Origin: Lytechinus pictus
Lineage: Eukaryota
DNA length: 64,000 bases
Assembly (NCBI RefSeq): GCF_037042905.1
Contig: NC_087257.1
Coordinates: 12,958,001 to 13,022,000, forward strand
Reading direction: 5' to 3'
Shown here piece after piece: positions 55,081 to 64,000 of this stretch; position 1 is the stretch's first letter; the number at the start of each line of letters is the position of its first letter. The notes under the pieces were generated by a model. The model searched no databases. It saw only the letters and a list, made by a program, of their open reading frames with translations, and was not told the DNA's origin. Both the position numbers and the translations under genes were made by a program.

Positions 55081-55719
55081 TTTTTTTTATATATTACAAT
55101 TTTTAAAAAGGTTTTATTCCCCACTGGGGAATCCGTTTCTGCAATATATTGCGGCGGCTATTTGGGCAAGATTATGACAAATGTGGGATAATCATGATAT
55201 AGTATAAATACATCTATTATTAAGAAAACAATAAAGGTAAAAGTAGCATTTTTTTTTACTGCAATTGGGCCTGATGCATTAGATGCACATAATGATATGC
55301 AGTATGAACAAGAAAAGTTAAGAGAGAATTCAAACTTTTGTTGAGCTTTGGGATGACCATTGTAAGGGAACAACAAACATTATATAGGAGCACTTTGCAT
55401 TTTATACTCCATACCACAGGGCCAAGATTCATTCGATGACTTTGTAGTCAAACTTACGAAGCAAGTGAAAAATGCAATTTTAGGGACCTACGAAAAGGAC
55501 CTGTGGATCATATCATTGTTGGTTAGAACAAGGTAATCTGCAGATGGAGAGGCGTGTTTTCCGTTCTTGTGTTCAAACGCAGGATGTGCAGTTGGTGCAA
55601 TGGAGCAAGTGCGTTGCATCTCACCTTTGAAGGTGTGCAGCAAATTGTCAAGAGGATCAAGAGCTGATTGTAGAGAGGTAGCAATCAATGACACACCATA
55701 TTTGCAATATACACTCCTG

Positions 55720-56746
55720 GGCCCCGTTGCATAAAACTTTTGCCGGAGTTTTTTACGGCAAAAAATCAGGAAACTACGGCAAAAAAAAATTGCCGGAGTT
55801 TTCCATTGCATAAAACTTTGCCGGAGTTTTATACGGCAAAACTTTTAAAAAACTCCGGCAAATCAAGTGGGTTTTTGCCGTAGCTTCTGTACCAACGGCA
55901 AAGTCCTAAAAACTCCGGCAAAGTAGTTTCAAGATGGCTGCTTTATTGTATGCCATACAGCAGGCAGCTGCCTTGAGACGGGAGCGAGTCTTTAGAGATC
56001 GAACGCATCCCTTGGATATCTATGACGACAGCGAGATGCTGAAGTTGTATAGATTCTCCAGACAGGGATGCGTTCATGTCATTAACAGACTCACTCCCCA
56101 TATCGAGCATCCAACGAGAAGAAATTTTGCTCTACCTGCAAGCTTGCAAGTATTTATCACCTTACAATATTTTGCGACCGGATCCATGCTTACGAACACC
56201 AGTGTAATACATGGAATACATCTGTCAACAGCATCAAGGACGATACGGAGAGTGACCTTAGCCTTGTATCAGCTAAGAAATGAGGTAATTACAGATAATT
56301 TCATCTATTTGATAATTATTAGGGCCTATTTTAAGGTCATCATGGATGAAGGAAAGTTATTGAAATTTCTGTGACTCTCAACACTGCAATTCTCAAAGAT
56401 TATTATTATCGTATCGAGCTTGAAATGTCTAACTTAGGCCTAACATATAACTTAGTAGTAGATCTATACTATATAAGACTTAGATCCAACATATTTCTAA
56501 AAAAAAAAAGGGTTATAAATGATGCCATGAAGCTGTTTTAAGTCTTCAAATTACTTGATTGAAGTTGAACTTCGTGCCCTTTTATTTTTTTTGTTACCAT
56601 GGCCACAGACGATCATTAAAAAGTTTGCCAGAGTTTTTTTGCCATGAAATTTTGACCGAATTTGAAACTCTGGCAAAAACTAAGGTTTTCGCCATAGAAA
56701 AACTATGGCAAAAATAAGTCTGGCAAAAGTTTTATGCAACGGGGCC
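55720..56746 (+). mobile_element. Internally deleted PIF/Harbinger transposon
   Basis: Perfect TIR GGCCCCGTTGCATAAAACTTTTGCC, CTG TSD, subterminal TTTGCCGGAGTTTT repeats. Confidence 0.9.
55934..56284 (+). pseudogene. Harbinger (HARBI1-like) transposase, first exon only
   Basis: RVFRDRTHPLD..YRFSR..LQYFATGS..STASRTIRRVT HTH region ending at a GAG|GTAATT donor; DDE core absent. Confidence 0.85.
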
Positions 56747-56959
56747 CTGGATCTTAGCAGGCATCTACCACAAATATGTTCATAAGGGGCTTGATGCCAA
56801 ACGGAAATTTTAGAGGTTGACTGCATGTTCTGCTGCTCACATAGCTCTCCAAGACATCTTATTCGACAAGAATTTGACACACGACACTTGCCTTATCACG
56901 AAAGCATGCCACACAGGAGAACTCGAGTTGTTTCACAACATGCCTCTCAGCTTCCATCT

Positions 56960-58189: not shown

Positions 58190-58980
58190 TCAGATGTGGT
58201 GAACAAACTTCAACGGCCTCTCACCAGGTGCTTTGAAGGTTTGAGACAAGATGAGATGTCTGCAGCAACAACCATCTTGGACACCAGTCAGTGGCCACAA
58301 AGAGGGAGGAATTGGAGCCATATGGGAACACCTCAGCTGACTTCGCATGTAGGCACTTCGCTACAATCTTGCAGCATCACATGTGTCAGCTGGAGAAAGT
58401 AATGTATGTAATGGTGTCTGCCACCACAACCATCTTGGACACCAGTCAGTGGCCACAAACGAAGGGGGGAACTGGAGCCATATGGGAACACCTCAGTTGA
58501 TGTCGCATGTAGGCACTTCGCTACAATCTTGCAGCATCATATTCAGCTGGAGAAAGTTATGTATGTAATGGTGTCTGCCTCCACAACCATCTTGGACACC
58601 AGTCAGTGGCCACAAATGAAGGGAGGAATTGGAGTAATAGGGGAACACGTCGTTTGACTTCTTATGTAGGCACTTCGCTACAATCTTGCAGCATCACAAG
58701 TTTCAGCTGGAGAACGTCATGTATGAGTCGCAGGAGGCTAAAATCTATCAGGTCTCCCAAGGCCAAGGCAGGAGAGTGCATGGAAGGACATCATGATGGA
58801 TGAGGAACTGAAGGCAAAGATACCCAACTTGCTACACATCGTGGAGATCCTGTTTGTCCTTCTTATCTCGACTGCTGCATGTGAAAGGGGCTTCAGCTGC
58901 ATGAAGAGAGTGAAGTCAGACTGGCGTTCTTCTTTGAAGGTCGACATGCTATCCAAGTTAATGTCTGTCTTGCTCCTCAG
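58190..58980 (+). pseudogene. hAT transposase C-terminal fragment (dimerisation domain)
   Basis: PNLLHIVEILFVLLISTAACERGFSCMKRVKSDWRSSL motif. Confidence 0.85.
58257..58725 (+). repeat. Tandem triplication, ~158-bp unit, inside the hAT fragment
   Basis: ACCATCTTGGACACCAGTCAGTGGCCACAAA at 58271, 58429 and 58586. Confidence 0.9.
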
Positions 58981-59099
58981 AATCATCACTAGGAGCAACT
59001 TTAACCAAAACGATTAGAGCAAAGTTTATTTATGTTGTGGACATTTCACCTTAGAACAGTTCAATGAAAACCAGCTCATGATGTGTCAAAATAAGTTCA

Positions 59100-59660
59100 G
59101 AAGTCGCCCCCATATTCTGAAGTTGGATTTAAATCAAATCTCGGTCTACATGTAAGTCTGATTTAATACATTTCAAAATCTCACTTTAGACCGCGGGTTT
59201 TGGAATTCCATTTCTGAAGTACGGTCTAACTTTAAACCCTGGTCAAAGTGGAGTCTAACTTGTGTGAAATTTAGACTGCGCCATGGCGTAGTTTAACTTT
59301 CAAAGATGGCCGATCTACTTGCTGCCTTGCGGCGGGGAGAGCAAATGCTCATGCTGAATAATCGGAGACAAGAAGAAGAGATAGAGCGGCCGTTGGTAGA
59401 AAGAAAGAAAAAAATCATATTTACAAGAACCACAAATTTCTGCATCAGTACCGATTGACCAAGGAAACTGGTTTGCATTCTGAAGTCAGGTCTCATTTAG
59501 ACCATGATATAAGTTAGACTAGAGTCTAACGGATCCACACTTAGACCGCAGGTCCAGTCTAACTCCAGTTTAGCGCGATTTGTGTTTCTGAAACTTCATT
59601 TTAATTAAACGCCGGGTTTAGGCGTAGTCCAACTTTAACCCATGGTCTAAAGGTAGACCA
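59100..59660 (+). mobile_element. Degenerate Harbinger-like element with transposase N-terminal remnant (ATG 59307)
   Basis: TAGACC/GGTCTA subterminal repeats; AAGATGGC start context as at 55934; QYRLTKE motif. Confidence 0.4.
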
Positions 59661-59837
59661 CAGGTACAAGTTGGTGGTCGTGGTGTTAGTGGATTACTTC
59701 GCATGTGCAATTGAAGCAGAAATTTGGTCTGCTTCTATTGCACATGCGCAGTAAATACAGGCTTCTTTGAATTGTGATAATCTTCTGCTACTCGAGATAA
59801 ATTCCTTCAACAAATAAGTTACAATATCCAAATAACC

Positions 59838-60761
59838 ATGGAGGAAAGTCACAAGAAAGCCAGGAAAAGAAACTGGGACAGCACGGAAAAAACCCTCCTC
59901 GTTCACCTCGTTGGTGATAAAATAGATATTATCGAAAAGAAGAGAAACGATTTCCCGGCCAACTCTGCCAAAATCAGGGCCTGGGAGGAAATCTTCAGTG
60001 AATTTCGGGCCCGGTATGGAGAGAGGAGGAGCATGAAAGAAATACGAGATCAATGGAAAAGGATAAAGCTCGCGGGGAAGGCTGAATGGACCGACTTCTC
60101 CAAAAAGAGGAGGATGACGGGAGGAGGAGAGCCACCCCAGCAACCCTCGGACCTCTCTGTCGTTCTGCGGGACATGGTCCCAAATGAGTTTGCGCAGATA
60201 CTCAACGAGTACGATGATGATGCAGGCATTGCCCGTCAGAACGACGATGCAGTGTATGCATTCGAGTACCTTGCAGGAATGCTGCCAGTGTTGGAGAAGG
60301 AAGAATGGACAAAGTACACGAAGAAGAGGAACAGCCGAAGGAATTCTGTCCGTGTATTCGGAATCCCAGAGAAGAAAGGAGAAGATACTGACCAACTCCT
60401 CATCAAGGCAGTGTCTGATGATCTTCCCTGCCCAATCTCTTCTGCTAACATCGATCATTCCCATCGATCAGGGAGGCCAAGAGCTGATTCAAAGAAGCCC
60501 CGCCCCATCCTGGTCAAGTTAACCCACTACAGGAAAAAGGCGGCCCTGATGAAGGATAGACATCAACTCAAAGGATCAGGCATATCCATCCAGGACTTGA
60601 CGAAAGCAAATCATCGGATCCTCTTGAAACTTTCTAACCATCCGAAGGTTGAGGCTGCCTGGACAGTCGATGGAAGAATCATGGCCGCCTTGAAGATGAA
60701 TGAGGAGGGGATTTCTATAAAGAGAGGTGTAACTTCCCTTCAAGAAGTTTCAACATTATAA
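59838..60761 (+). CDS. Chimeric Myb/SANT-like DNA-binding domain + LINE ORF1p RRM/CTD protein, array copy 1 (307 aa, intact)
   Basis: N-terminus RKRNWDSTEKTLLVHLV..KIRAWEEI..EIRDQWKRIK..RRMTGGG; C-terminus SRRNSVRVFGIPE..IDHSHR..PRPILVKL..DLT..AWTVDGRI. Confidence 0.75.
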   Translation: MEESHKKARKRNWDSTEKTLLVHLVGDKIDIIEKKRNDFPANSAKIRAWEEIFSEFRARYGERRSMKEIRDQWKRIKLAGKAEWTDFSKKRRMTGGGEPPQQPSDLSVVLRDMVPNEFAQILNEYDDDAGIARQNDDAVYAFEYLAGMLPVLEKEEWTKYTKKRNSRRNSVRVFGIPEKKGEDTDQLLIKAVSDDLPCPISSANIDHSHRSGRPRADSKKPRPILVKLTHYRKKAALMKDRHQLKGSGISIQDLTKANHRILLKLSNHPKVEAAWTVDGRIMAALKMNEEGISIKRGVTSLQEVSTL

Positions 60762-61287
60762 ACTTTTCTATCAATCCAAGAGGTTTGAATTGAATCTATT
60801 GCTCACATTTGTTTTGCTCTTATTCTCTTTTTCTCTACATATACATGTAAGTACATTATTGTGTGATCAGGTATGATTATCATGTTTTCTGTATATATAC
60901 ACTATTTTTATTTTTTTTGTATCTCATGTTGTGTGTGCTGATGCGGCTGGTTTGTATGTGTGTACATGTATGTGGAGGTTCCTCAACAATTCCAATTGTT
61001 TACGTGTTTGCTTTGTGGCTTACATCCTGTAGATGAACTGCATCTCTATCTCTATCTACCACTGCTGAGGTCACAATGAAATAAATAAATATAAGAAAAT
61101 TGCTTTATTAAGAGAATACCAGCCGATTTCAGATTTTACAAATTAGCATAATAAATCAGTGGTAAATTTGAATAATTTTGGAGATCATAATGTGGGTCGC
61201 ATTCTTGCTTATATCCATTACAAGATCAATTACAAAATAGCCAAGTCAATTTTTGATTCAAACATATTAAATTTTAGGAACTGGCTT

Positions 61288-61623
61288 ATGGGAGCATCCA
61301 CAGACCAGATGAGAAAAATTGGTGTTATTTTTGCCTACAGTGATCCAATATCCCGTAAAAAGAATCCTCCGATTACGAAAAAGTGCCCCTATTGTGGTAC
61401 TTCAGTGCAGCGGTTGGACAACCACCTCCATACTGTGCACAACGTCCCACGAAAATCAGAGGAAATGGTCCAACAACTGAAGGCTGTGAAAAGAAACTGC
61501 ACAGACTTCTCCAAAAAGAGGAGGATGACGGGAGGAGGAGAGCCACCCCAGCAACCCTCAGACCTCTCCGTCCTTCTGCGCAGTAAAAAAATATTTTTGT
61601 GTTATGTTGATTTCTTCTTGTAA
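61288..61623 (+). other. Short ORF with a C2H2-like finger (CPYC-x8-NHLHTVH) fused to a duplicated Myb tail; repeated at 63109-63444
   Basis: ORF track plus nucleotide identity of 61504-61580 to 60093-60169. Confidence 0.5.
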
Positions 61624-61663
61624 ATTAGTTTTGTAATCGAAATAATTACAAGTTTCAATAACC

Positions 61664-62592
61664 ATGGAGGAAAGCCAAAAAAAAAAAAGGACAGGAAAAG
61701 AAACTGGGACAGTTCAGAAAAAACCCTCCTTGTTCACCTCGTTGGTAATAGAATAGACATAATAGAGGAGAAGAAAAACGATTTTCAGGCCAACTCGGCC
61801 AAAATCAGGGACTGGGAGGAAATCTTCGGTGAATTTCGGGCCTGGTATGGAGAGAGGAGGAGCATGAAAGAAATACGAGATCAATGGAAAAAGATAAAGC
61901 TTGCGGGGAAGGCTGAATGGACCGACTTCTCCAAAAAGAGGAGGATGACGGGAGGAGAGCCACCCCAGCAACCCTCGAACCTCTCCGTCGTTCTGCGGGA
62001 CATGGTCCCAAATGAGTTTGCGCAGATACTCAACGAGTACGATGATGATGCAGGCATTGCCCGTCAGAACGACGATGCAGTGTATGCATTCGAGTACCTT
62101 TCAGGAATGCTGCCAGTGTTGGAGAAGGGAGAACGGACAAAGTACACGAAGAAGAGGAACAGCCGGAGGAATTCTGTCCGTGTATTCGGAATCCCAGAGA
62201 AGAAAGGAGAAGATACTGACCAACTCCTCATCAAGGCAGTGTCTGATCATCTTCCCTGCCCAATCTCTTCTGCTAACATCGATCATTCCCATCGATCAGG
62301 GAGTCCAAGAGCTGATTCAAATAAGCCCCGCCCCATCCTGGTCAAGTTAACCCACTACAGGAAAAAGGCGGCCCTGATGAAGGATAGACGTCAACTCAAA
62401 GGATCAGGCATATCAATCCAGGAGGACTTGACGAAAGCAAATCATCAGATCCTCTTGAAACTCTCTAACCATCCGAAGGTTGAGGCTGCCTGGACAGTCG
62501 ATGGAAGAATCATGGCCGCCTTGAAGATGAATGAGGAGGGGATTTCTATAAAGAGAGGTGTAACTTCCCTTCAAGAAGTTTCAACATTATAA
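61664..62592 (+). pseudogene. Myb/SANT-LINE ORF1 chimera, copy 2 (poly-A frameshift near the start; 242-aa ORF from 61864)
   Basis: Near-identical to copy 1; an A12 run shifts the frame, which could be a sequencing error. Confidence 0.7.
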
Positions 62593-63484
62593 ACTTTTCT
62601 ATCAATCCAAGAGGTTTGAATTGAATCTATTGCTCACATTTGTTTTGCTCTTATTCTCTTTTTCTCTACATATTCATGTAAGTACATTATTGTGTGATCA
62701 TGTATGGTTATCATGTTTTCTGTATATATATACACTATTTTTATTTTTTTTGTATCTCATGTTGTGTGTGCTGATGCGGCTGGTTTGTATGTGTGTACAT
62801 GTACGTGGAGGTTCCTCAACAATTCCAATTGTTTACGTGTTTGCTTTGTGGCTTACATCCTCTAGATGAACTGCATCTCTATCGATCTACCGCTGCTGAG
62901 GTCACAATGAAATAAATAAATTGTTTAATTAAGAGAATACCAGCCGATTTCAGATTTTACAAATTAGCATAATAAATCAGTGGTAAATTTGAATAATTTT
63001 TGAGATCATAATGTGGGTCGCATTCTTGCTTATATCCATTACAAGATCAATTACAAAACAGCCAAGTTTATTTTTGATTCAAACATATTAAATTTTAGGA
63101 ACTAGCTTATGGGAGCATCCACAGACCAGATGAGAAAAATTTGTGTTATTTTTGCCTACAGTGATCCAATATCCCGTAAAAAGAATCCTCCGATTACGAA
63201 AAAGTGCCCCCATTGTGGTACTTCAGTGCAGCGGTTGGACAACCACCTCTATACTGTGCACAACGTCCCACGAAAATCAGAAGAAATGGTCCAACAACTG
63301 AAGGCTGCGAAAAGAAACTGCACAGACTTCTACAAAAAGAGGAGGATGACGGGAGGAGGAGAGCAACCCCAGCAACCCTTGGACCTCTCCGTCCTTCTGC
63401 GCAGTAAAAAAAGATTTTTGTGTTATGTTGATTTCTACTTGTAAATTAGTTTTGTAATCGAAATAATTACAAGTTTCAATAACC

Positions 63485-64000
63485 ATGGAGGAAAGCCAAA
63501 AAAAAAGGACAGGAAAAGAAACTGGGACAGTTCAGAAAAAAACCCTCCTTGTTCACCTCGTTGGTAATAGAATAGACATAATAGAGAAGAAGGAAAACGA
63601 TTTTCAGGCAAACTTGGCCAAAATCAGGGCCTGGGAGGAAATCTTCGGTGAATTTCGAGCCCGGTATGGAGAGAGGAGGAGCATAAAAGAAATACGAGAT
63701 CAATGGAAAAGGATAAAGCTCGCGGGGAAGGCTGAATGGACCGACTTCTCCAAAAAGAGGAGGATGACGGGAGAGCCACCCCAGCAACCCTCGGACCTCT
63801 CCGTCCATCTGCGGGACATGGTCCCAAATGAGTTCGCCCAGATTCTCAACGAGTACGATGACGATGCAGGCATTGCCCGTCAGAACGACGATGCAGTGTA
63901 TGCATTCGAGTACCTTGCAGGAATGCTGCCAGTGTTGGAGAAGGGAGAACGGACAAAGTACACGAAGAAGAGGAACAGCCGAAGGAATTTTGTCCGTGTA
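63485..64000 (+). CDS. Myb/SANT-LINE ORF1 chimera, copy 3 (open to window end)
   Basis: Compensating +2/+1 homopolymer indels keep 172 codons open. Confidence 0.65.
   Translation, partial: MEESQKKRTGKETGTVQKKTLLVHLVGNRIDIIEKKENDFQANLAKIRAWEEIFGEFRARYGERRSIKEIRDQWKRIKLAGKAEWTDFSKKRRMTGEPPQQPSDLSVHLRDMVPNEFAQILNEYDDDAGIARQNDDAVYAFEYLAGMLPVLEKGERTKYTKKRNSRRNFVRV

What the first reader, a model, noticed from the sequence alone, without database searches (positions are those of the whole stretch)
59831..64000. The chimera is amplified as a ~1.82-kb tandem array with mostly frame-preserving differences
Seen: ATGs at 59838, 61664 and 63485. Indels in the body are whole codons: the GGA run is 3/2/1 in copies 1/2/3, and IQDL versus IQEDL. 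Copy 3 has compensating +2/+1 homopolymer changes, and only copy 2 is frameshifted, in an A12 run. Copies differ by many substitutions, so simple assembly duplication is unlikely. No TIRs, poly(A) tails or TSDs separate the units. Inference: unequal crossing-over or rolling-circle amplification, forming a coding macrosatellite (DUX4/D4Z4-like in organisation only).
Basis: partly seen in the sequence, partly recalled or inferred. Interest (0 to 1): 0.7.

Follow-up and report, generated by a model that had tools for sequence, protein, structure and literature searches.

The report
Decaying five-copy transposon-fusion gene array
In a sea urchin genome, a stretch holding an accidental in-frame fusion of two transposon genes was copied head-to-tail into five 1.8-kb units that now change like pseudogenes, so it is an ordinary young tandem duplication, not a protein-coding satellite.

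Summary
The tandem array is real. Reading past the window end shows only five units (8.6 kb, window 59831 to 68396 equivalent) on chromosome-scale contig C13 of what is almost certainly the Lytechinus pictus assembly. Each unit holds exon 1 of a PIF/Harbinger Myb-like gene, an internal LINE ORF1 fragment (RRM and C-terminal domain), about 450 bp of DNA unique to this locus, and an 83-nt copy of part of the Myb exon at the unit junction. The array ends exactly where that 83-nt insert would begin. Both junction breakpoints show microhomology. This fits an in-place template-switch duplication that later grew by unequal crossing-over. Only units 1 and 3 keep a 307-codon frame. Unit 2 has a homopolymer frameshift, unit 4 lacks the Myb N-terminus and has a stop, and unit 5 has a stop. 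Substitutions since amplification fit neutrality (31 non-synonymous to 15 synonymous; omega about 0.75). The Myb lineage before amplification was constrained (4 to 11). Unit 1 is a mosaic: its 5' end comes from another Harbinger subfamily. RNA coverage is low, on one strand only, and runs through the spacer. The coding-macrosatellite reading is not supported. Interest is low.

The parts
59103..59469 (+). Fragment of another PIF/Harbinger end. It has a TIR-like ..ATTCTGAAGT.. motif and the first ~30 codons of a Harbinger transposase (MADLLAALRRGEQML.., 59306-59400). This is context to the left of the array.
   Evidence: it matches the far end of the internally deleted C4 element, L007; repeated TTCTGAAGT motifs; the same N-terminus occurs in the transposase genes beside the Myb genes on C12 and C17. 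Pfam finds nothing in the 50-aa piece.
59470..59830 (+). 5' end of the Harbinger element that supplies the Myb exon: a degenerate terminus, the subterminal region and the leader. Only unit 1 has it, so it marks the left edge of the array.
   Evidence: eight other loci share homology that starts at exactly this point, with terminus GGCCCGTATTCTGAAGT. Here the first 7 nt are mutated.
59694..59754 (.). Palindrome with 27-nt arms and a 7-nt loop, conserved in all Harbinger paralogs. The junction-2 breakpoint (TGCG|CAGTAAA) lies inside its right arm, 6 nt from the arm's end.
59831..61656 (+). Unit 1 (1826 bp).
59838..60761 (+). Unit 1 open frame, 307 codons. Residues 1 to about 154 come from Harbinger Myb-like exon 1 (Pfam Myb_DNA-bind_5, residues 9-83). 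Residues 166-307 are the LINE ORF1 RRM and C-terminal domain. The first 170 bp of the unit come from a C4-like Harbinger subfamily, so the unit is a mosaic.
   Evidence: the mosaic; 84% identity to LINE ORF1 on C22; the model's best PDB matches are human L1 ORF1p entries 2ykp and 2w7a.
60087..60169 (+). Q: the 83-nt stretch of the Myb exon that served as template for the junction insert.
   Evidence: family D6.
60331..61051 (+). LINE-derived internal fragment: the 3' half of ORF1 plus the ORF1-ORF2 spacer. It stops 45 bp before the ORF2 start of the nearest relative.
   Evidence: 83% to C22 (L006); an endonuclease ORF lies downstream in the parent.
61052..61497 (+). Locus-specific spacer with a short open frame that holds a CxxC..HxxxH motif. 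Apart from one weak 79-nt match, the genome has it only in the five units.
   Evidence: (only sub-threshold zinc-ribbon hits).
61498..61580 (+). Q2: an 83-nt copy of Q inserted at the unit junction. Junction 1 is on its left (..GAAACTGCACAG|ACTTCTCC). Junction 2 is on its right (..TTCTGCG|CAGTAAA).
61581..61656 (+). 76-bp leader in front of units 2, 3 and 5: a diverged Harbinger leader.
61657..63477 (+). Unit 2. Its frame is lost at the A6 run, 61715-61720. An open frame of 242 codons remains from an internal ATG.
63478..64000 (+). Start of unit 3, cut by the window end. The whole unit keeps 307 codons, but codons 5-19 are read in another frame than in the Harbinger parents. Units 4 and 5 follow outside the window at L021 6147-7720 and 7721-9396 (L021 position = window position minus 59000).
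   Evidence: P0001.

Best explanation
This is a young tandem duplication confined to one locus. It has five head-to-tail units of about 1.8 kb, 8.6 kb in all. The duplicated segment happens to contain an in-frame junction between exon 1 of a PIF/Harbinger Myb-like gene and an internal fragment of a LINE ORF1, followed by unique DNA. Shown here: the make-up of the unit, the five units, their breaks, the mosaic 5' end of unit 1, the junction sequences and the substitution counts. Inferred: the first duplication arose by microhomology-mediated template switching. Replication reached unit position 1674, jumped back into the Myb exon and copied 83 nt. It then jumped to the leader inside the right arm of a 27-nt-arm palindrome, using TGCG as microhomology. 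Unequal crossing-over then raised the copy number. One crossover between the two 83-nt repeats removed the Myb N-terminus of unit 4. Recombination or gene conversion with a Harbinger copy of another subfamily replaced the 5' end of unit 1. Since amplification the open frames have drifted like pseudogenes. The little RNA seen is most simply read-through or background transcription, not mRNA of a gene family.
For: The whole unit occurs only at C13:13017831-13026396, as five units. Unit 3 runs to position 1750 and then jumps to 257. Unit 5 ends at 1674. The array end reads ..GAAACTGCACAG|GTTCAAAG, and every internal junction reads ..GAAACTGCACAG|ACTTCTCC. Junction 2 shares TGCG with both source sequences. 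Q2 differs from Q by about 4%, the same as the units differ from each other. The spacer and the first 455 bp of right flank are unique in the genome, so the array grew in place. Frames: units 1 and 3 have 307 codons. Unit 2 is frameshifted. Unit 4 has no N-terminus and a TGA at codon 155. Unit 5 has a TAA at codon 256. There are 46 substitutions since amplification, 31 non-synonymous (2 of them stops) and 15 synonymous. Neutrality predicts 33.7 +/- 2.9 non-synonymous. Omega is about 0.75, and omega of 0.3 or less is rejected. The branch leading to the array's Myb exon has 4 non-synonymous and 11 synonymous changes, which differs from the later phase (p=0.008). The low divergence of the LINE part holds equally for its non-coding tail, at 3.7 against 4.0 events per 100 bp. 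Parents: the Harbinger terminus, the multi-exon Myb gene and a convergent DDE transposase; LINE ORF1 with an endonuclease ORF downstream. RNA: about 100 reads per run at 6% sampling, all in one orientation, with similar depth over frame and spacer. Wherever units can be told apart, the reads carry letters that are not those of unit 1.
Against: Two units keep a full 307-codon frame. Coding indels are mostly whole codons (p=0.03), and the three A-runs differ by exactly 3 nt. That could reflect some selection on the frame. Omega between 0.5 and 1 cannot be told apart with 46 changes. Copy number and homopolymer lengths could not be checked against DNA reads, because no DNA run of this species was on offer. 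The strand of the RNA was not calibrated. One set of Logan contigs (X1, kind unknown) has about 35-fold higher word depth on the unit than on the left flank. That is more than five copies of background would give.
Confidence: 0.7

Rival explanations
1. This is a young, lineage-specific gene family. The Myb-ORF1p fusion protein is made from at least units 1 and 3. Selection keeps the frame open, and the tandem copies raise the dose.
For: Two frames of 307 codons survive. Whole-codon indels are in excess. The frameshift in codons 5-19 is compensated in units 3 and 5. The Myb exon was constrained before amplification. Both domains still score or fold: Pfam hits in units 1 and 3 and a confident RRM/C-terminal-domain model. 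Some RNA is present.
Against: Three of five units are broken, two of them by stop codons. Substitutions are neutral within the available power. RNA is weak, runs through the spacer, and lacks the letters specific to unit 1, the unit with the parental N-terminus. No full-length relative turned up among 5.8 billion proteins apart from the array's own unit 3. The constraint before amplification is explained just as well by life inside an active Harbinger lineage.
Confidence: 0.12
2. The array acts through RNA. It is part of a one-strand transcription unit, for example a piRNA-cluster-like trap or a read-through tail of the neighbouring gene. Its transcripts are antisense to Harbinger and LINE genes.
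For: All reads over 59980-61656 have the first mate on the + strand. In the usual stranded libraries that means RNA from the minus strand, antisense to the frames. Coverage is continuous over frame and spacer. A WD40-repeat gene on the minus strand lies 3.4-9 kb to the right and is transcribed toward the array.
Against: The library's strand rule was not calibrated. No small-RNA data were examined. Depth is low. Read-through transcription needs no function.
Confidence: 0.1
3. This is partly an assembly artefact. Allelic or mis-joined haplotype copies were stacked in tandem, or a different true copy number was mis-assembled. The homopolymer frameshifts would be long-read errors.
For: Divergence between units (3-4%) falls in the range of allelic divergence reported for sea urchins (my recollection, not tested here). 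The frameshift of unit 2 is a single base in a homopolymer. RNA reads carry letters found in none of the five assembled units, at 60605 and 60667.
Against: An independent contig from another run crosses a unit junction, 61656 to 59831. Every unit carries the composite Q2 junction, and the 3/4 boundary is a distinct recombinant. Five ordered units with unique flanks on both sides are not what haplotype stacking gives. The stops in units 4 and 5 are substitutions, not homopolymer errors.
Confidence: 0.07
4. The array arose by rolling-circle or extrachromosomal-circle amplification followed by reinsertion.
For: The units are strictly head-to-tail with one junction type. The sharing of variants among units is star-like.
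Against: The left end continues without a break into the native Harbinger 5' end. The right end stops exactly at the junction-1 breakpoint and continues into unique DNA. That is the signature of duplication in place. A reinserted concatemer would start and end at arbitrary unit positions and have an empty donor site elsewhere. The genome holds no other copy of the unit.
Confidence: 0.04

Closest known systems
Microhomology-mediated template-switch duplications (FoSTeS/MMBIR-type tandem duplications with templated inserts at the junction)
   Same: The duplication is head-to-tail and collinear with both flanks. The junction carries an 83-nt insert copied from 1.4 kb away inside the duplicated segment. 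The microhomology is 1 nt at one breakpoint and 4 nt at the other. One breakpoint lies inside the arm of a strong palindrome.
   Different: The mechanism is inferred from the scar alone. Later unequal crossing-over took the array to five units, and one internal crossover and one conversion tract have reshaped it.
D4Z4/DUX4 and other coding macrosatellites
   Same: The unit is kilobase-sized, each unit carries an intronless open frame of mobile-element or retrogene type, and the units are arranged head-to-tail.
   Different: There are five units, not tens to hundreds. Only two frames are intact. No constraint on the frames was detected. Copy-number polymorphism was not tested. The frame is a transposon-transposon fusion, not a retrogene of a host gene. 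The D4Z4 features cited are from established knowledge.
PIF/Harbinger Myb-like proteins and their domesticated relatives (NAIF1 with HARBI1)
   Same: The N-terminal 154 residues are exon 1 of such a gene, with a Myb_DNA-bind_5 domain.
   Different: The repeat region and C-terminal coiled coil of the 447-aa parent (P0003) are missing. No transposase partner lies within the unit.
LINE ORF1p and its domesticated derivative L1TD1 (PMC11925450)
   Same: The C-terminal 140 residues fold like the L1 ORF1p RRM and C-terminal domain. They are 84% identical to an ORF1 of a resident LINE.
   Different: The coiled-coil trimerisation part of ORF1 is absent. No Pfam L1 family matches. There is no evidence of host function.

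Membership tests
Coding macrosatellite (D4Z4/DUX4-like) | Head-to-tail tandem units of about 1 kb or more | tested here: met
   1816-1833 bp spacing and a single junction type.
Coding macrosatellite (D4Z4/DUX4-like) | Many units, typically tens or more | tested here: not met
   The assembly has five units and the genome has no other copy. This could not be checked against DNA reads.
Coding macrosatellite (D4Z4/DUX4-like) | An intact open frame in most units | tested here: not met
   Two of five are intact, one is frameshifted, two carry stops and one of those lacks the N-terminus.
Coding macrosatellite (D4Z4/DUX4-like) | Copy-number polymorphism among individuals | not testable with these tools
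   No DNA run of this species was offered. RNA reads do show unit variants that are absent from the assembly.
Template-switch (FoSTeS/MMBIR-type) tandem duplication | Microhomology at the breakpoints and a templated insert from nearby sequence at the junction | tested here: met
   Junction 1 shares 1 nt and junction 2 shares TGCG. The 83-nt insert is a copy of unit positions 257-339.
Template-switch (FoSTeS/MMBIR-type) tandem duplication | Array ends collinear with unique flanks, the right end at the junction breakpoint | tested here: met
   Unit 5 ends at position 1674, which is the junction-1 breakpoint. The flank is unique.
PIF/Harbinger Myb-like gene | A Myb/SANT-like domain, encoded inside an element with Harbinger termini and a DDE transposase gene | tested here: met
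   PF13873 at E 5e-13. The terminus is shared by 8 or more loci. DDE transposase exons lie beside the Myb gene on C25, C12 and C17 (recognised by eye from conserved motifs, no Pfam run). The array holds exon 1 only.
LINE ORF1p | An RRM plus C-terminal domain fold, encoded upstream of an endonuclease/RT ORF2 | tested here: met
   Foldseek best hits are 2ykp (E 5e-6) and 2w7a. The parent copies have an endonuclease ORF downstream. The Exo_endo_phos_2 hit is at E 1e-4, below Pfam's cut-off. The array lacks the coiled coil and ORF2.
Uni-strand piRNA cluster | One-strand long precursor transcript and abundant 24-31-nt small RNAs antisense to transposons | tested here: inconclusive
   Reads lie in one orientation only, but the strand was not calibrated and no small-RNA data were examined.

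The most novel reading that the evidence does not exclude
The fusion of a Harbinger Myb DNA-binding domain with a LINE ORF1p RNA-binding module is a newborn sea-urchin gene. Its frame was kept open through amplification, as the compensated frameshift and whole-codon indels would suggest. At least two units still encode it. It could, for example, tether LINE or other RNA at Harbinger-type DNA sites or interfere with either transposon.
Probability: 0.1. Interest if true: 0.6.

Novelty: new member of a known kind. Interest (0 to 1): 0.25.

Why it matters
The locus is a clean worked example of how a transposon-rich region builds, amplifies and then loses an open frame. The template-switch scar is readable, later crossovers can be traced, and one conversion tract restored a parental N-terminus. 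It matters for annotation. The 307-codon frames of units 1 and 3 look like genes but behave like pseudogenes, and a gene finder would be misled. If the minority reading were true, it would be a rare case of a DNA-transposon and retrotransposon domain fusion caught at birth.

Tried and rejected
- **NAHR between two Harbinger copies as the origin of the array:** rejected. The array would then end in a Harbinger copy, but it ends at unit position 1674 in unique DNA.
- **Standard 5'-truncated LINE insertion, or LINE-mediated template switching, as the origin of the fusion:** rejected. The LINE piece lacks the element's 3' end and stops 45 bp before ORF2.
- **Helitron or other transposon borders between units:** none found.
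- **Lower divergence of the LINE-derived frame as a sign of selection:** rejected. The adjacent non-coding LINE tail is just as conserved.
- **Rfam scan of the array:** no family matched.
- **Identity of the spacer frame with the CxxC..HxxxH motif:** only sub-threshold zinc-ribbon hits and a few weak relatives on C5 and C2. Left unnamed.
- **Literature searches for a known Myb-ORF1 fusion or a described array:** nothing relevant beyond L1TD1.
- **Copy number from read depth:** not possible, because no DNA run of the species was on offer and the single read-laying run went to RNA.
- **The large profile search of 1.84 billion proteins:** not run. The word search already showed no full-length relative, and the verdict on the array does not rest on that absence.
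Full report
**What is there.** Direct repeats with 1816-1833 bp spacing fill 59831-64000. The window is G000:C13:12958001-13022000. A search of the whole 812-Mb genome with one unit finds the complete unit only here, as five units from C13:13017831 to 13026396. Unit 3 runs to unit position 1750 and then continues at position 257 of the next unit. Unit 5 stops at position 1674. The fetched DNA is L021 (window 59001-69000 equivalent) and L022 (right flank).

**Species.** The genome is almost certainly the Lytechinus pictus reference.
- The L. pictus protein LOC129262055 (P0003) maps exon by exon at 94-100% to C25.
- Its recorded contig length of 1,487,000 equals that of C25.
- A second L. pictus protein (P0005) equals the C12 copy over its first exon.

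**Make-up of a unit.**
- Positions 1-467 are the leader and exon 1 of a Myb/SANT-like gene (Pfam PF13873, E 5e-13).
  - Its full relatives are multi-exon genes of 447-452 aa, with a repeat region and a C-terminal coiled coil.
  - They sit in elements that share one terminus, GGCCCGTATTCTGAAGT, in at least eight loci.
  - Those elements carry convergent DDE transposase exons, so this is a PIF/Harbinger family. I recognised the transposase by its motifs and did not score it with Pfam.
  - The fusion point is the end of parental exon 1.
- Positions 501-1221 are an internal LINE fragment.
  - Residues 166-301 of the frame are 84% identical to residues 110-246 of an ORF1 on C22.
  - The parents have a coiled-coil N-terminus and an endonuclease ORF downstream.
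  - An AlphaFold model is confident over residues 170-307. Its best PDB matches are the human L1 ORF1p trimer and its RRM.
  - Hundreds of ORF1 relatives exist in the genome, but the two halves occur together only here.
- Positions 1222-1667 are unique to the array apart from one weak 79-nt match on C5. They hold a short frame with a CxxC..HxxxH motif and only weak relatives.
- Positions 1668-1750 (Q2) are a copy of positions 257-339 (Q) of the Myb exon.
- Positions 1751-1826 are a diverged Harbinger leader.

**How the array formed (inferred from the scars).**
- Every internal junction reads ..GAAACTGCACAG|ACTTCTCC... The array's right end reads ..GAAACTGCACAG|GTTCAAAG.. and continues into 455 bp of unique DNA.
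- The second breakpoint..TTCTGCG|CAGTAAA.., shares TGCG with both source sequences. It lies inside the right arm of a palindrome with 27-nt arms, 6 nt from the arm's end.
- Q2 differs from Q by about 4%, as the units differ from one another.
- This fits one replicative template-switch event that made a tandem duplication with an 83-nt templated insert, followed by unequal crossing-over to five units.
- The 3/4 boundary is a crossover between Q2 and Q that removed the leader and the first 256 bp.
- Shared variants are few and conflict with one another, so the units are related in a star-like way.
- Collinearity with both flanks argues against reinsertion of a rolling-circle product.

**Unit 1 is a mosaic.** In its first 170 bp it is 5% from the C4 Harbinger copy but 11-15% from units 2, 3 and 5. 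From position 171 on it is 1-4% from the other units and 9-14% from C4. The parental-looking N-terminus of the one 'perfect' frame therefore comes from recombination or conversion with another Harbinger subfamily.

**Are the frames maintained?** Frame status of the five units:

| Unit | Status |
|---|---|
| 1 | 307 codons |
| 2 | Frameshifted |
| 3 | 307 codons, with codons 5-19 in another frame than the parents |
| 4 | No N-terminus, TGA at codon 155 |
| 5 | TAA at codon 256 |

- The A-runs of units 2, 3 and 5 are 12, 9 and 6 long. Unit 2 is out of frame because the second run is A6, not A7.
- I took the majority letter of the five units as a counting reference inside the scripts. One script also printed its 307-aa translation. 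On that reference, 46 substitutions have occurred since amplification: 31 non-synonymous (two are stops) and 15 synonymous.
  - Placing the same mutation types at random gives 33.7 +/- 2.9 non-synonymous.
  - Omega is about 0.75. Values of 0.3 or less are rejected, and 0.5-1 cannot be separated.
- The branch leading to the array's Myb exon has 4 non-synonymous and 11 synonymous changes, which differs from the later phase (p=0.008). The exon was therefore constrained, probably inside an active Harbinger lineage, until shortly before amplification.
- The LINE part shows 10 to 6 on its branch.
- The LINE-derived frame diverges less than the spacer, but so does its non-coding tail (3.7 and 4.0 events per 100 bp, against 7-11 elsewhere). 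This is therefore not a coding signal.
- Whole-codon indels are in excess in the frame (5 of 6 against 1 of 7, p=0.03). Three of the five lie in GGA or AGG triplet repeats. The other two are the A-run length differences.

**Transcription.**
- Three ribosomal-RNA-depleted runs from 2026 gave about 100, 100 and 15 reads on 59001-61656 at 6% sampling.
- From 59980 to 61656 every read pair has its first mate on the + strand. Under the usual library chemistry this means minus-strand RNA, antisense to the frames. I could not calibrate this.
- Depth is similar over frame and spacer.
- Where the units differ, the reads carry the letters of units 2-5 (60420, 60562, 60616, 60632, and the AGG insert after 60591). 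They also carry two letters found in no assembled unit (60605, 60667).
- One Logan contig of another run crosses a unit junction.
- A WD40-repeat gene lies on the minus strand 3.4-9 kb to the right and points at the array. Read-through is therefore a simple explanation.
- No DNA run of the species was on offer, so copy number and homopolymer lengths remain unchecked.

**Verdict.** The mechanism 'unequal crossing-over' is supported and can be sharpened to a template-switch duplication plus crossovers. No full-length relative of the fusion exists among the proteins searched, apart from the array's own unit 3. The sequences are transposon fragments, not viral, and no reconstructed sequence is given in this report.

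Noticed in passing
window 55715-56760: A separate short Harbinger-type element with terminal inverted repeats, GGGCCCCGTTGCATAAAAC at one end and its complement at the other. It encloses the N-terminal part of a HARBI1-like transposase frame (MAALLYAIQQAAALRRERVF..).
   Followed up: no
window 58257-58725 and 58793-59017: Three tandem copies of a 157-bp unit (88% matches) lie directly upstream of a hAT C-terminal dimerisation-domain fragment (PF05699, E 3e-8), both on the + strand.
   Followed up: partly
L022 855-1320 (C13:13026855-13027320): A repeat of about 465 bp sits 455 bp to the right of the array. It has over 1000 candidate copies, and the 39 scored elsewhere in the genome are 96-99% identical. 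It is a very young SINE- or MITE-like family.
   Followed up: no
L022 1683-1872: A short element is bounded by TTAACCCTAAAAGGACTGGG and its inverted copy CCCAGTCCTTTTAGCGTTAA, with G- and C-runs inside. It looks like a piggyBac-type MITE at a TTAA site. This is read by eye.
   Followed up: no
L022 3766-9493, minus strand: Four WD40-repeat exons of a host gene are transcribed toward the array. From memory it resembles Elongator subunit 2; that was not tested. It could supply read-through RNA over the array.
   Followed up: partly
G000 C2:52004747-52013245: Five weak relatives of the spacer's CxxC..HxxxH frame are spaced 0.6-1.3 kb apart on one strand, with a distant Myb-like match 3 kb further on. 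This may be another small tandem cluster that pairs the two motifs.
   Followed up: no
window 60050-60068 and 60605, 60667 (RNA reads): In run X17, 12 of 16 reads carry T>C at 60050, A>T at 60066 and G>A at 60068. In the frame, the last two changes turn codon 77 into a stop. All reads of X17 and X18 carry 60605 A>G and 60667 T>C, which no assembled unit has. Other animals therefore hold unit variants or extra units.
   Followed up: partly
L013-L016 (C18, C16, C11, C9): Four near-identical short derivatives share the Harbinger 5' end and the first 23 Myb codons, then switch to unrelated sequence at the same point. They form a non-autonomous subfamily of the same element.
   Followed up: partly
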